DNA of 64,000 nucleotides from Dimorphilus gyrociliatus (Eukaryota; Animalia; Annelida). How positions within the stretch are numbered: the stretch's first letter is position 1; each line of letters opens with the position of its first letter. The stretch spans positions 243,310-307,309 of the forward strand of contig CAJFCJ010000005.1 of NCBI GenBank assembly GCA_904063045.1, read 5' to 3'. The notes beneath the pieces are model-generated. The model made no database searches and was not told the origin of the DNA. It was given only the letters and a program-made list of their open reading frames with translations. Positions 9,344 to 14,480 of the stretch are shown here, one piece after another. The translations under genes and the position numbers were made by a program.

Positions 9344-12300
9344 ATGAATCAATTACTTAACATTGTAAGGAAATATTCTCCTCTTTCCAGAATTGATGAT
9401 ACAGGATTTGGTAGACTGCAAAATGATATAAATTGCGTTGTTTTCAACGCTCCAGTCTCTTATCAAGACGTTATTAATCTTATACAATGCTGTAAATATG
9501 AAATTTGTTCTAAGGATGGTTTTACTTCAAATTCCTGCGGAGAACAAGCGTTAAACAGAGTTGTTCTATTTTTAGTTACTGCAATAGCTCAGTATGTTAT
9601 TCGAGTATTATTTTTTATTTTACATATTTGAAATAGTTGTTATTGTTTTTAAAACAGGAATTTTTCAATGAATATTCAATACTTATATGGAATTTATAAA
9701 GAATTATTTGATGTTTATATATATGTATACGAAGGAGATTTTATATCGTCAGGAGTCTATCAAACTCTAAATTTTCTTACAAATAATCCATACCAAGACC
9801 AATACTTGCAGGTATTAATAACATATTAATATTCAATTGGTAATTTATTCATATGTCCTTCTCTTAAAGACTCAATTCAATGAATTTTATATAAGAAAAT
9901 TACTGAAGGCGTTATGCCAACATTTTCAACCAAAAGCACAAGATAGAGCAGTTGGAGAATGGCAGTCGAACTTTTGTAATAATCTCTATCATATTTTCAA
10001 CCTAATGTCGTACGTATAGACACATCTTGTCGTATTATCTCTTTCTTATTCTTAATGTTTACTTTAACAGAAAGGTTGAACTTGAAAAGTGTAAATATGA
10101 CATTACAGAAGCATTATTATATTGGACTGATATAAGTATGGGATGCCCAGAAAATGATCAATCAAAGCAGCTTATCTTTGATTTTTCAACAAATATGATT
10201 GTTTTTTTAGACTGTACTGCTAAATTGATAATTCAATATCCAAATAGCCATTCACTTTATTATGTAAGAATTTAGAAAGATAAAATAGCAATTTTATAAT
10301 AAACAACTACTTTTAGGGTCTAAGCGATGAAGCCTTCGATTCTCTTTTAACAAGGATTCAAAGGATACTACTAACGCCAGATTTTCCTCAAAATTCTAAC
10401 GTAAATAATGCTATGATGCTATTAGTGCAAGATTGTTTGGCAGACTTTGTCCTGTAATAAATAAATAACAGAATTCTTCAGTTATAGTTCAATTTTTCAG
10501 AAAAAGTACAGATAATAAGATATTATGTAAGATTTATGGTTTATATACAAAATTACGTACGTCACCAAAATGGGAAGTACAAAATTTAATAGAAGACATG
10601 GAGGAACCATTCAGTGAAAAGATGAAATCAATTAAAGTAAGTTTAAAAGTGTTGAAATATTAAAAAAAGAAATTATACAAGTTTGAATTGTTTCTTTAGT
10701 TGACAGATTATGGAATGAAAAGTGAATTTGATATATTCCTCGATGAATTAAAATCATTAAATAACACACGAGCAGTAAATGAATTTGTTCAGAGACACGA
10801 GGACAAATTTAAGGAAGAGTATCTTCCGATTTTAAGGTAGTAGTATAGGTTATGAATAATATTCTAACGCCAATTTATCACTCTCTCTTTCTCTCTCTCT
10901 TTAGTAGCAACGTCGACAAATTTAAAGAATATTCATTAAATCTAATTGCAAATCCTTATTCATACATTTGTTGTAGTTTTTTTGAAAAATATGTTGCCAA
11001 GAGTAAATTAGTAAACTTTAAAGAAAATCCACAATTATTAAGTTTTCTATTCGATGAAATGTATAAAGCAAACTGCGGCTATTACCAAGACTCTAAAGAT
11101 GGATTTTGGGCAATTGGTAGAGGCATTCTAGGCGCAATTGAGTAGGTTAATTAATTTTCTAGATTCTTTAACGGAATATTCATAATCAATAATAATTTAT
11201 TATTAGAAAACAAGGCTTACTACAAAAGTTAAAGAAAGATCTATATGAATTTGTTGATAGAATGTACGATCTTCCTTTGCATCCTTATCATTATAGCGTT
11301 TGCTTTATTTCTTATAAACTTGATTGGAAGGTAAAATATAGAAATTATTGTAATAATAATTAATAAATAACCAATAATTAATCTCTTTTAGGGTGAATTC
11401 GATAAACTTGATAGAATTTTGAAAAAGTTAAAAAAACTATTGGAAAGAGATCATAGTCATTTCTATAAAAATGATATAATTGTTCAAGTGACCCAATTCG
11501 TCTTTGAATATTTTCATAATTCAAATGGGTACAATACCGTTTAATTCGTAATATTTTTAGTTTTTCTAATAATTATTTATCTACAGCAAAAATAAAAAGA
11601 TCATTGAATTTACAAGCGATTTTGCAGATCTGTTTAACTATTGTTTTACATTACCTTGGGCGATTGATTTAAAAGATGAGAGGTTGGAAGGTAAACACGT
11701 CGATCTGGAAAAGAGGAGAACGTTAGCTGGACAAATTTTAATACATTTTATGAGAGATATTTACAAAACAGTTAATAAAGAGAAATCTAATTCATTCTTT
11801 ATAAATATTCTCTATATGTTTCATATTTCAGAATAGAGATTTCGATGATTTCATAAAACCGATTGTTGGCACTGTAAAACGGATTAAAAATCAGAATGAT
11901 GATGAAATTTTACAGGTTATTATTCCTTTTCAAAGAATAGAGATATACGTAATTTTAATATAATAGGAACATGCTGCCACATTTTTAAGAAGCATTGCAG
12001 ACAAATTAGACCTTCTCGGCAATGAAGCTGGCGAAGAAATCATCAAGGAATATGTGGAGAGTCGTGATATTAGCCAATTCCGTAAGAGATATATACATAT
12101 AGAGTATATATACATGCTTTATTATTTGTTTACTTTAAAAACAGCCAATATTGTTGATATGTATCCCAATTATTGCGATGCTATCTACAAAAATCTTGAA
12201 ATTTTTGTGGATATTGTAAAGGAAGATGAAGAGCTAAGTACATGGAACATGACTCAATTATTGAATAAGATAGTTCACAATGACTATGCCAAAATTAATA

Positions 12301-14480
12301 ACAATATCTTCAAATATATGATGAGTCTTTTCGATTCGAAATATGGTCCGTCACTTATAGAAGCTTATAGAAAATTAGCTACAGCTCGATTTAGCTACTT
12401 TCAAGACTATCATACTAAAATTATGAACACTGTTAAATCTTACGAATATGGTAGTTCTTACTTACCTCTTTTACCAGACTTATGTCAAACTGAGCAACTA
12501 ACCAAATCTTATACCAAATTGGTCTGGGATAAAATAAAAGTTACTGCTCCAGAATATGTTAATACTGTATTCGCTGCTCTAAGAGAAATTGCTTTACGAA
12601 ATAAAAGTGCTGTTGCTGTTTACAAATCAGATTTGGAAAAGATGAAAGATAATCCTAAGATTCATGACCAAGTTCTTGGAATTTTGGATGTTTTAGAAGG
12701 TAGAACTTTGGAAAAAGTAACAAATGATATTGATGAACAAAGAGAGGACATTGAGAATCTCGATTCCAGAGTCACTGAAAATGAAGAAAAGATTGTTGTT
12801 CTCGATGCCGATGTTAAAGAAACAAAGAAAGATGTTGCTGCTGTAAAATTAGATATGAAGGAAGCAAAGAAACGCCTTGGTCAAATTGAATATACAATGA
12901 AAGGACTCGACGAAAGAGTTGAACAACTAAATCATATGACTCTATCACACGCTCCAGCATGGTCTCGTCATGTTTCAGAGTTAATGAATGTCAAGTCTGA
13001 TAATGATTGGAGACTTCTCTCTATGAAATTGAACTATTCTAATGATGATATTCGAAATTGGGCTACTCAACCAGATCCTTGTCTGTCAATGTTGGACGAA
13101 TGGTTCGCTACACACAAAACTAGAGAAGCTACTTTTGCTATTTTAAATAATTTGAAAGAAATGAACAGACTCGACGCTGCAGAAATTGTGGAAAATGCTT
13201 TAGCTGATGTAAAAAATGTTGTTAAAGATGATAAAGATGAAGAATTTGAAAAACCTGAAATATTCCTCAGCTATCAATGGGGACATCAACAAGAAGCTAA
13301 AATGTTAAAGAAACACCTAGAGATGGCCGGCTTTAAAGCCTGGATGGACATTGGTCAAATGGGTGGAGGCGATAAACTATATGCAAAAATTGATGATGGT
13401 GTAAGATCAGCTAAAGTAATCATTAGCTGTGTAAGTGAGAAATATGCAAAATCAGCCAATTGTTGTAGAGAAGTAAATCTATCAACTAACCTTGGTAAAC
13501 CAATGATTCCTTTACTTATGGAAAAACTCCAATGGCCGCCTGCTGGTCCGATGGGTCCAATTATGTCGGAATATCTATATGTTCAATTCTACAAAAATGG
13601 AGGCATGCAAAAAGGTGATACTGTATTTTGGATGCCTCCTAAATTTCAAGAGCTACTGATGCAAATTCGGTACTATGTTGTTCCTGATATGAAATTAATA
13701 ACTAAAGATTCTCCATATGCTGGATGGATGAATCCACCTGAAGAAATTATAATAATACCAAAGAGAGAGCAAAAGGCTATAGAATCTAAAAAATCAAATA
13801 CTAAAAATGAGGCAGAAGTGATAAGTCCCGATGTTTTCATCTCTTATCAATGGGATAAACAACCTCAAATCAAACGCCTATATAAGAAGTTGAGTGGATT
13901 GGGATATCATTGTTGGCTGGACATAATGCAAATGGGTGGTGGAGATTCACTATTTGATAAAATTGATAAAGGAATCAGAGGTTGTAGAGTTGTTATTTCC
14001 TGTGTCACACCGAAATATGCTTTAAGTGCTAATTGTCGAAGAGAAGTTTCATTATCGGGAGCATTAAATAAACCAATCATACCATTATTATTGGACAATA
14101 TGAAGTGGCCTCCAGAGGGACCAATGTCAATGGTATTTACTCAACTGTTATATATAGGTTTTCACAGGAAGAAAGATGATAAACTATGGGAAGGCGATGA
14201 ATTTAATCAATTGATTTCGAAAATTGATATGAATGCACCTGGTGGCAAAAATGAGCAGCAATCATCTAGCAAAGCAATAAACAATGAAACTGAAAAGAAA
14301 AATACACAGACAAAGAAAACGGATGAAGAGTCTAAGAAAGAAGAGAAAAATGTTGGAGATGAAGCCAAACAGCCTGAACAGTCTCCTCAACCTAAACAAA
14401 GAGATAACTCTGAACCCTCATCTCATAATACTAACAATACCCCTCCGCCTAAAACATCATCGACATGTAATATTCTATAA
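9344..14480 (+). CDS. Paralog A: multi-exon helical N-terminus + coiled coil + DEATH + TIR + TIR + CaaX protein
   Basis: Exons joined by GT-AG introns (e.g. 9592-9657, 9812-9869, 12082-12144). First exon (..KYSPL..) is homologous to the first exons at 57865 and 63580. Last exon has heptad repeats, a DEATH motif (DWRLLSMKL...MLDEWF...LKEMNRLDAAEIVE), two TIR_2-like domains (IFLSYQW, VFISYQW; SANCxRE) and terminal CNIL*. Confidence 0.85.

What the first reader, a model, noticed from the sequence alone, without database searches (positions are those of the whole stretch)
9344..14480. Family of helical-coiled coil-DEATH-TIR-TIR proteins with the catalytic glutamate kept in both TIRs
Seen in three paralogs (9344-14480, 52498-57865, 58289-63580): a large multi-exon helical N-terminus of unknown fold, an ~80-aa heptad coiled coil, a DEATH domain and two TIR_2-like domains. 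Both TIRs carry SANCxRE-V (in A, Glu codons at 13470-13472 and 14043-14045). Known: this alphaC Glu is the catalytic residue of NAD+-cleaving TIRs (SARM1, plant TIRs, bacterial Thoeris ThsB), whereas MyD88/TLR scaffold TIRs are not active NADases; activity needs TIR oligomerisation. Inference: a SARM1-like logic (autoinhibitory helical sensor, oligomeriser, TIR enzyme) built from different parts, with a tandem TIR that could pre-form the composite active site. I do not recognise this architecture as a characterised family.
Basis: partly seen in the sequence, partly recalled or inferred. Interest (0 to 1): 0.85.

Follow-up and report, generated by a model that had tools for sequence, protein, structure and literature searches.

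The report
Annelid HEAT–Death–double-TIR immune gene family
Three neighbouring genes of the tiny worm Dimorphilus gyrociliatus belong to a family already catalogued in invertebrates (helical repeat sensor, coiled coil, Death domain, two TIR domains); both TIR domains keep the residue needed to cleave NAD+, but nobody has tested whether they do.

Summary
Genes A (9344-14480, +), B (52498-57865, -) and C (58289-63580, -) each encode a long helical N-terminus, a 75-residue coiled coil, a Death domain and two TIR_2 domains. A is transcribed and spliced (14 exons).

The window is Dimorphilus gyrociliatus: A = DgyrCDS3196, C = DgyrCDS3205.

The architecture is not new. It matches "ecTIR-DC family 6" (Gerdol 2017, as cited in PMC6836662), also called "MyD88-like with Armadillo fold" (PMC9334734). 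Relatives occur in molluscs, annelids, a nemertean, a flatworm, echinoderms, hemichordates and amphioxus.

The N-terminus is not an unknown fold. It is a HEAT/ARM solenoid.

Added here:
- The catalytic-position Glu is invariant in both TIRs in 121/121 sequences.
- The closest solved TIRs are the NADases SARM1, AbTIR and SPARTA.
- 108 of 120 homologues end in a CaaX prenylation box, usually after a basic K/S-rich stretch.
- The signalling core is 93-100% identical in DNA between A, B and C, while the rest of the shared last exon is only 35-65% identical (A-C tail about 80%).
- A 2026 screen listed this family as Glu-positive but did not test it.

Enzymatic activity is plausible (about 55%) but unproven. 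No pre-formed TIR1-TIR2 pair was supported. This is a new member of a known kind.

The parts
9344..14480 (+). Gene A (= DgyrCDS3196, P0002). The 14 coding exons are 9344-9591, 9658-9811, 9870-10009, 10071-10263, 10317-10453, 10501-10636, 10700-10836, 10905-11141, 11207-11330, 11392-11528, 11587-11770, 11832-11915, 11967-12081 and 12145-14480.
   Evidence: A spliced contig in run X1 shows 12 GT..AG joints. The 13th intron (10837-10904) was inferred from the contig's piece coordinates and the sequence. All exons are open in frame and total 4362 nt. tblastn of P0002 maps along the gene at 77-98% per piece, with the last exon at 96%.
9344..12707 (+). Gene A: N-terminal HEAT/ARM-type alpha-solenoid of about 840 aa, encoded by exons 1-13 and the start of exon 14.
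   Evidence: AF2 on P0002:1-850 gives pLDDT 89.6 and about 48 helices. Foldseek hits are karyopherin-beta, CAND1 and RRP12. ESM Atlas hits are coatomer-gamma/adaptin, DNAAF5 and importins. Homologues give weak Pfam hits to Adaptin_N and INTS7_N.
12708..12932 (+). Gene A: coiled coil of 75 aa with 11 heptads.
   Evidence: 18 of 22 a/d positions are L/I/V/M in one unbroken register. Family-conserved residues fall on that register.
12933..13253 (+). Gene A: Death domain.
   Evidence: Pfam PF00531, E 9.2e-11. The model has six helices at pLDDT above 90. The nearest solved Death domains are p75NTR, UNC5, ankyrin and MyD88, all weak matches.
13254..13679 (+). Gene A: TIR1 (TIR_2 type).
   Evidence: Pfam TIR_2. 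PDB phmmer gives the SARM1 TIR at 2.2e-05. Foldseek's best hits are the SARM1 TIR and SPARTA.
13470..13472 (+). Gene A: TIR1 Glu at the catalytic alphaC position (in 'CCREV').
   Evidence: It aligns to SARM1 E642 and is invariant in 121/121 family sequences.
13824..14234 (+). Gene A: TIR2 (TIR_2 type), 48% identical to TIR1.
   Evidence: Pfam TIR_2, best stretch. PDB hits are AbTIR, PdTIR and SARM1. TIR1 versus TIR2 gives BLASTP E 2e-49.
14043..14045 (+). Gene A: TIR2 Glu at the catalytic alphaC position (in 'NCRREV').
   Evidence: Invariant in 121/121 family sequences. It lies in the same motif as in TIR1.
14235..14477 (+). Gene A: low-complexity K/E/S-rich tail ending in the CaaX box CNIL (14466-14477).
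   Evidence: Translation. 108 of 120 homologues end in C-a-a-X, 84 of them with X = L, usually after a basic K/S-rich stretch.
52498..57865 (-). Gene B, a paralogue. Features: last-exon ORF 52498-55134; coiled coil 54229-54453; Death 53908-54228; TIR1 53482-53907 with Glu at 53689-53691; TIR2 52924-53334 with Glu at 53113-53115; CaaX CLLL at 52501-52512.
   Evidence: ORF list and coordinates. N-terminal exons were mapped by tblastn with paralogues at 25-49% identity. No RNA evidence was examined for B.
58289..63580 (-). Gene C (= DgyrCDS3205, P0001). Features: last-exon ORF 58289-60658; coiled coil 59975-60199; Death 59654-59974; TIR1 59228-59653 with Glu at 59435-59437; TIR2 58670-59080 with Glu at 58859-58861; CaaX CSIL at 58292-58303.
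   Evidence: tblastn of P0001 gives 100% identity over 824 aa of the last exon. ORF list and coordinates.

Best explanation
Identity (shown). A, B and C are three locally duplicated members of the invertebrate family catalogued as ecTIR-DC family 6, also called 'MyD88-like with ARM fold'. The layout is an 840-aa HEAT/ARM solenoid, a coiled coil, a Death domain, TIR-TIR, a basic tail and a CaaX box.

Proposed mechanism (inferred):
1. The protein is geranylgeranylated and sits on the cytosolic face of a membrane.
2. The fast-evolving solenoid is the recognition or autoinhibitory part.
3. On activation, the coiled coil and Death domain drive higher-order assembly.
4. Assembly brings the two Glu-bearing TIR domains into the head-to-tail contacts that enzymatic TIRs need.
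5. The TIRs then cleave NAD+, either to make a cADPR/ADPR-type signal or to deplete NAD+.
6. The Death domain may in parallel recruit Death-domain kinases or adaptors.

The role is most likely innate immunity or cell death.

Shown here: the architecture, expression of A, Glu invariance, similarity to enzyme TIRs, CaaX conservation and homogenisation of the core. Inferred: prenylation, oligomerisation, catalysis and the immune role.
For: - Domains: Pfam. HEAT solenoid fold. Unbroken heptads.
- Glu is invariant in both TIRs in 121/121 sequences from Spiralia and deuterostomes. Human and fly MyD88 have Phe at that position (Table S2 of 10.64898/2026.04.20.719644, seen).
- The nearest solved structures by sequence and by fold are the NADases SARM1, AbTIR/PdTIR and SPARTA TIR-APAZ.
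- The Death-TIR-TIR module is 50-69% identical to non-Dimorphilus homologues (50-53% to deuterostome members), against 11-16% for the N-terminus.
- Hurieva et al. 2026 found 12 of 61 Glu-bearing animal TIRs make cADPR in E. coli, in a Glu-dependent way. The Lottia member V4A9E8_1 is listed there as GLU and was not tested.
- CaaX box in 108/120 homologues, usually after a basic K/S-rich stretch.
- At least 12 core copies in a 78-Mb genome, in local clusters. The genome paper reports that most of its nine expanded families are locally duplicated immune genes.
- Core DNA is 93-100% identical between A, B and C; the rest of the shared last exon is mostly 35-65% identical.
- Gene A is spliced and expressed.
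- Mollusc members are reported as gill-expressed.
Against: - No biochemical data exist for any member.
- Only 12 of 61 Glu-bearing animal TIRs were active in the 2026 screen, so the Glu is necessary but a weak predictor.
- The position four residues before the Glu is Asn here, where SARM1 and plant TIRs have Trp.
- AF2 gives no confident TIR1-TIR2 packing, pTM 0.43, and the complex test gave no answer.
- A Death domain plus TIRs at a membrane is also just what a scaffold adaptor would need.
- Prenylation and the oligomeric state are inferred from sequence only.
- The immune role rests on expression notes in molluscs and on family expansion.
Confidence: 0.55

Rival explanations
1. Scaffold-only adaptor, a giant MyD88-like protein. 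The TIRs bind receptor TIRs at the membrane, the Death domain nucleates a Myddosome-like kinase complex, and the conserved Glu serves structure or binding, with no catalysis.
For: - Death plus TIR is the MyD88 logic, and the literature treats the family as a putative adaptor.
- The membrane anchor would place it next to TLRs. Arthropod MyD88 also has a C-terminal membrane-localisation domain (PMC7075850).
- Most Glu-bearing animal TIRs gave no product in the screen.
Against: - The TIRs lack the MyD88 hallmarks. MyD88 Box 2 reads RDxxPG; here the loop reads GQMGGGD. The catalytic position is Glu here, not the Phe of MyD88.
- The best structural and sequence matches are NADase TIRs.
- Glu is invariant in both domains in all 121 sequences from annelids to amphioxus.
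Confidence: 0.28
2. Nucleotide-signal hydrolase rather than producer. Like Drosophila Raw, the tandem TIR would form one pocket that degrades cADPR or a related signal, acting as a regulator of SARM1-type or other TIR signalling.
For: Raw has two TIR domains, both required, with a putative pocket between them and essential glutamates. It hydrolyses cADPR but not NAD+ (PMC13455253). This family also has an obligatory TIR pair.
Against: - Raw's second TIR has a different conserved residue set (Asp/Arg/Tyr/Asp) and no Death domain. Here both TIRs share one motif set and are 48% identical.
- No sequence comparison with Raw was made.
- No inter-TIR pocket was predicted with confidence.
Confidence: 0.1
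3. Decaying duplicates or annotation artefacts without function.
For: The genes are recent local duplicates, and some genome copies are fragments or carry stops.
Against: - A, B and C have intact ORFs.
- A is spliced with 13 clean GT..AG introns and an open frame.
- The module is strongly conserved across phyla.
Confidence: 0.02

Closest known systems
ecTIR-DC family 6 (Gerdol et al. 2017, Dev Comp Immunol 70:145, as cited in PMC6836662 and PMC5549309); also called 'MyD88-like proteins with Armadillo-type fold' in Aplysia (PMC9334734) and 'MyD88-like protein L1/L2' in sea urchin database names
   Same: [quoted passage not shown] Direct homology: 45-56% identity to mollusc and sea urchin members at E below 1e-170. 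The Aplysia LOC101850562 named in PMC9334734 is my hit P0085.
   Different: Nothing structural differs; these are annelid members. Added here, and not found in the open papers I could search: Glu invariance in both TIRs, the conserved CaaX box with its basic K/S-rich lead-in, the unbroken coiled coil, and core homogenisation. I could not read Gerdol 2017 itself.
SARM1 / dSarm / TIR-1 (ARM-SAM-SAM-TIR NADase)
   Same: A helical-repeat N-terminus, then an oligomerisation module, then a Glu-bearing TIR. The SARM1 TIR is the best solved match to TIR1.
   Different: There are no SAM domains; a coiled coil and Death domain take their place. There are two TIRs. The solenoid is about 840 aa, resembles karyopherins rather than the SARM1 ARM domain, and is hypervariable. 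The SARM1-specific loop is absent (gap in the alignment). A C-terminal CaaX box is present.
MyD88
   Same: A Death domain followed by TIR, with a presumed membrane-proximal signalling role.
   Different: TIR is of the TIR_2 type, with Glu where MyD88 has Phe. There is no RDxxPG Box 2. There are two TIRs, a huge N-terminal solenoid and a coiled coil.
Drosophila Raw (tandem-TIR cADPR hydrolase, PMC13455253)
   Same: An animal protein with two TIR-fold domains that are both needed, and with glutamates proposed as catalytic.
   Different: Raw has dimerisation domains rather than coiled coil plus Death. Its two TIRs have unlike conserved residue sets. No homology was tested here.
Plant TNL receptors and bacterial TIR-effector sensors (Thoeris ThsB, SPARTA, TIR-STING)
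   Same: A variable sensor, induced oligomerisation and a Glu-dependent TIR NADase or signal synthase. SPARTA and AbTIR are among the top structural hits.
   Different: There is no STAND NTPase, Argonaute or STING partner domain. The Death domain and prenyl anchor are animal-type additions.

Membership tests
ecTIR-DC family 6 | Long N-terminal region with ARM-like helical repeats | tested here: met
   AF2 on P0002:1-850 gives pLDDT 89.6 and is all-helical. Foldseek and Atlas hits are HEAT/ARM solenoids.
ecTIR-DC family 6 | Central Death domain | tested here: met
   PF00531 at E 9.2e-11, above the Pfam cut-off.
ecTIR-DC family 6 | Two C-terminal TIR domains | tested here: met
   PF13676 at E 7e-43 in two stretches. 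TIR1 and TIR2 are 48% identical.
ecTIR-DC family 6 | Sequence homology to mollusc members, with spread in invertebrates and none seen in vertebrates | tested here: met
   Of the 215 hits, the 120 listed come from molluscs, annelids, a nemertean, a flatworm, echinoderms, hemichordates, amphioxus and a few unnamed assemblies. None of them is from a vertebrate or arthropod. The original definition (Gerdol 2017) could not be read.
MyD88 | Single TIR with MyD88-type Box 1 (FDAFICY) and Box 2 (RDVLPG) | tested here: not met
   The family consensus is FLSYQWG and WMDIGQMGGGD, and there are two TIRs. The MyD88 motifs are from PMC7075850.
MyD88 | Non-catalytic residue (Phe) at the alphaC position | tested here: not met
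   Glu in 121/121 sequences. MyD88 Phe235 is from Table S2 of the Hurieva preprint.
SARM1 | Tandem SAM domains forming the octamer ring | tested here: not met
   No SAM hit in Pfam on the full-length P0002 or P0001.
SARM1 | Conserved ARM domain with an NMN/NAD+ allosteric site | tested here: not met
   The N-terminus is only 11-16% identical across phyla. Structural hits are karyopherin and CAND1, not the SARM1 ARM domain. A ligand site was not tested.
Enzymatic (NAD+-cleaving) TIR domains | Glutamate on helix alphaC facing the pocket | tested here: met
   It aligns to SARM1 E642, lies in the alphaC helix of the model and is invariant.
Enzymatic (NAD+-cleaving) TIR domains | Measured Glu-dependent NAD+ cleavage or cyclic ADPR production | not testable with these tools
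   The family is absent from the 154 TIRs tested by Hurieva et al. The motif MGGGD does not occur in their complete Table S4, and V4A9E8 occurs only in Table S3.
CaaX-prenylated proteins (geranylgeranyl type) | C-terminal Cys-aliphatic-aliphatic-Leu | tested here: met
   CNIL, CLLL and CSIL in A, B and C. 108/120 homologues have a CaaX box, 84 of them with X = L, usually after a basic K/S-rich stretch such as KKKSS. Actual lipidation cannot be tested here.
Raw-type tandem-TIR cADPR hydrolase | Homology to Raw TIR-1/TIR-2 and their residue sets | not tested
   No Raw sequence was available by reference. Only the paper's description was used.

The most novel reading that the evidence does not exclude
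The family is a prenyl-anchored animal counterpart of plant TNL and bacterial TIR sensors. A hypervariable HEAT solenoid would detect a pathogen or danger cue. Assembly through the coiled coil and Death domain would activate a tandem TIR in which TIR1 and TIR2 supply the two halves of the composite NAD+ site. The result would be a cADPR-type second messenger at the membrane, together with Death-domain signalling, giving a dual-output immune receptor lost in vertebrates and ecdysozoans.
Probability: 0.25. Interest if true: 0.8.

Novelty: new member of a known kind. Interest (0 to 1): 0.5.

Why it matters
Until 2026 SARM1 was regarded as the only enzymatic TIR protein in animals. A 2026 preprint argues that catalytic TIRs are widespread, but it tested isolated domains and did not include this family.

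This family has several features that make it a good test case:
- It is conserved from annelids to amphioxus.
- It joins an enzyme-type tandem TIR to a Death domain and a predicted lipid anchor.
- It has multiplied in a genome that otherwise shrank.

A positive NADase assay would link NAD+-derived signalling to Death-domain signalling in animals, and would give a full-length sensor-effector to study. A negative result would show that an invariant catalytic-position Glu does not imply catalysis.

Tried and rejected
- Complex prediction on TIR1 (model residues 105-250) against TIR2 (297-434): 'no answer', score 0.00. This is neither support nor evidence against binding.
- The AF2 model of Death-TIR-TIR gives good domains but pTM 0.43, so I draw no conclusion on domain packing.
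- Search with TIR2 alone: mostly fragments of the same family from unannotated assemblies, plus rotifer, coral and abalone short proteins. It did not link the family to the fish TIRs that were active in the Hurieva screen. The resemblance to those (SYQWD, WMD, S-x-N/S-C-x-x-E) is at motif level only and was not aligned, because I did not type their sequences.
- Gerdol 2017 is not held, so the family number rests on citing papers.
- No open paper combining CaaX, TIR domain and Death domain was found.
- The neighbouring ORF 46576-50541 was checked as a possible ADPR-gated partner. It has a TRPM-like transmembrane domain but no NUDIX hit in Pfam. Adjacency alone is not evidence, and I do not build on it.
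- Only one sequencing run held the locus, as contigs, so expression level, tissue and transcripts of B and C were not assessed.

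
Full report
**What is there**

The last-exon ORF of gene A (12054-14480, +) carries a Death domain (PF00531, E 9.2e-11) and two TIR_2 domains (PF13676, E 7e-43, two stretches). ORFs with the same layout lie at 52498-55134 (-) and 58289-60658 (-).

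The segment before the Death domain is a 75-residue coiled coil with 11 unbroken heptads, and 18 of 22 a/d positions are L/I/V/M. TIR1 and TIR2 are 48% identical, so they are an internal duplication.

**Organism and gene models**

A homology search returned Dimorphilus gyrociliatus proteins at the top. tblastn of those proteins on the window shows two matches:
- Gene C = DgyrCDS3205 (P0001), 100% identical over 824 aa of the last exon.
- Gene A = DgyrCDS3196 (P0002).

Gene B was not among the returned proteins.

One public run (X1) holds a spliced 2828-nt contig over gene A with 12 GT..AG joints of 47-66 nt. A 13th intron (10837-10904) lies in a repeat that the tool skipped. I inferred it from the contig's piece coordinates and the sequence. 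The resulting 14 exons all have GT..AG borders, are open in the implied frame and total 4362 nt, that is 1453 codons plus a stop.

For full-length work I used the deposited protein P0002 (1429 aa), which is 24 codons shorter. I did not resolve where the two models differ.

**The N-terminus**

AF2 on P0002:1-850, with an alignment of 46 homologues, gives mean pLDDT 89.6 and about 48 helices. Foldseek against the PDB returns karyopherin-beta2, RanBP5, CAND1, RRP12, SF3B1 and transportins. The ESM Atlas returns coatomer-gamma/adaptin, DNAAF5 and importins. Homologues give weak Pfam hits to Adaptin_N and INTS7_N.

So the N-terminus is a HEAT/ARM-type alpha-solenoid, not an unknown fold. It evolves fast. 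It is 11-16% identical between D. gyrociliatus and other phyla, and 26-37% between D. gyrociliatus paralogues. Spiralian members have about 800-900 residues before the coiled coil, and deuterostome members about 500-550.

**The C-terminal module**

Death-TIR-TIR is 50-69% identical between gene A and non-Dimorphilus homologues, with the deuterostome members at 50-53%. In an alignment of 118 homologues plus A, B and C, the Glu is invariant in TIR1 and in TIR2, 121/121 each. The motifs SYQW, (W)MDI.QMGGGD, KID.G.R, S.NC..E and WPP.G are nearly invariant.

By sequence, the best solved relatives of TIR1 are SARM1 TIR chains (2.2e-05). HMMER aligns 'CCREV' onto SARM1 'HKEIV', which contains E642. 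TIR2 hits AbTIR, PdTIR and SARM1.

By structure, the top Foldseek hits are the SARM1 TIR, SPARTA TIR-APAZ and AbTIR. MAL and MyD88 TIRs rank lower. In the AF2 model (pLDDT 83.5) both Glu residues lie in the helix at the alphaC position. The pTM is only 0.43, so the relative placement of Death, TIR1 and TIR2 is undefined. A two-chain complex test of TIR1 against TIR2 gave no answer.

The Death domain is generic, with weak matches to p75NTR, UNC5, ankyrin and MyD88.

**Membrane anchor**

A, B and C end in CNIL, CLLL and CSIL. This was already noted on this window as s1-081743. Across the family, 108 of 120 homologues end in C-a-a-X, 84 of them with X = L. The box usually follows a basic K/S-rich stretch such as KKKSS or KSKS, and this holds from annelids to amphioxus.

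From established knowledge of CaaX processing, X = L directs geranylgeranylation, and a polybasic stretch favours acidic inner-leaflet membranes, as in Rho and Rap GTPases. Lipidation itself is inferred. I found no open paper that mentions this for the family.

**Family dynamics**

The 78-Mb genome holds at least 12 full-length Death-TIR-TIR cores:
- four on contig C5, three of them in this window;
- four on C12, with identical core scores;
- others on C63 and C35.

Some pairs are probably haplotig duplicates.

At the DNA level the core (about 12.77-14.23 kb in A coordinates) is 93-100% identical among A, B and C. The upstream part of the same exon is 45-65% identical.

The genome paper reports only nine expanded families, most of them locally duplicated immune genes. 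It does not name this family in the text I read.

**What is known**

[quoted passage not shown] TIR domains' as characteristic of ecTIR-DC family 6 of Gerdol et al. 2017, and speculates on TLR signal transduction.
- PMC5549309 reports gill expression of family 6 in a mussel.
- PMC9334734 lists Aplysia LOC101850562, which is my hit P0085, as MyD88-like with an Armadillo-type fold.
- Sea urchin members carry the database names 'MyD88-like protein L1/L2'.

The architecture is therefore catalogued and is regarded as a putative adaptor. No functional study was found.

On enzymatic TIRs:
- Hurieva et al. (bioRxiv 10.64898/2026.04.20.719644) report that most non-TLR animal TIRs keep the Glu. In their screen 12 of 61 tested animal TIRs produced cADPR in a Glu-dependent way, including the TLR4 TIR.
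- Their Table S3 lists V4A9E8_1, the Lottia member P0042, as a cluster representative with GLU.
- Neither that identifier nor the family motif MGGGD occurs in their complete table of tested TIRs. So this family was flagged but not tested.
- Their Table S2 gives Phe at this position for human and fly MyD88.
- PMC7075850 gives MyD88 Box 2 as RDVLPG, which this family lacks.
- PMC13455253 shows that Drosophila Raw, another tandem-TIR protein, is a cADPR hydrolase that needs both TIRs. This is an alternative activity to consider.

**Interpretation**

Identity as ecTIR-DC family 6 members is secure.

The favoured mechanism is a prenyl-anchored HEAT-solenoid sensor, assembly through the coiled coil and Death domain, and Glu-dependent NAD+ processing by the tandem TIR, possibly with parallel Death-domain signalling. 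I put this at about 0.55.

The main rival is a scaffold-only adaptor (about 0.28), followed by a Raw-like hydrolase (about 0.10). The Glu is necessary but a weak predictor, since only one in five Glu-bearing animal TIRs scored in the screen. Its absolute invariance in both domains across phyla, together with the NADase-like TIR type, tips the balance.

The comparison with SARM1 holds only at the level of logic. There are no SAM domains, the solenoid is different and hypervariable, and there is a Death domain and a CaaX box.

**Verdict**

These genes are new members of a known kind, with a testable and still untested enzymatic hypothesis and a conserved predicted lipid anchor as the main additions. 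Interest 0.5.

Noticed in passing
window 46576-50541 (+): A single 1321-aa ORF without introns. It has an Ion_trans domain at residues 941-1207, and its transmembrane part best matches TRPM2-like channels (Nematostella TRPM2-like 6co7, E 5e-18). Pfam finds no NUDIX/NUDT9H domain and no TRPM N-terminal domain. Adjacency alone does not support that.
   Followed up: partly
G000:C12:339677-360446: Four tandem copies of the Death-TIR-TIR core with identical scores (86% identity to gene A), spaced about 6-8 kb apart. This is a second cluster, corresponding to DgyrCDS8667-8671, and it appears to be homogenised within itself.
   Followed up: partly
window 12771-14234 versus 52924-54390 and 58670-60136: Core DNA identity has sharp boundaries: 93-100% among A, B and C and 99-100% between B and C. 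The adjacent coding sequence of the same exon drops to 45-65% upstream. The tail is 35-52% identical for pairs with B and about 80% for A-C. This indicates gene conversion across 38 kb and between opposite strands.
   Followed up: yes
window 14194-14213: One contig of run X1 differs from the window at three places (G>A at 14194, A>G at 14201, G>A at 14213) at the end of TIR2. It probably derives from a paralogue or allele, since B and C differ from A in this stretch.
   Followed up: no
window 9592-12144: All 13 introns of gene A are 47-68 nt long, in keeping with the compact genome. The deposited protein model DgyrCDS3196 (1429 aa) is 24 codons shorter than the transcript-supported exon set (1453 codons).
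   Followed up: partly
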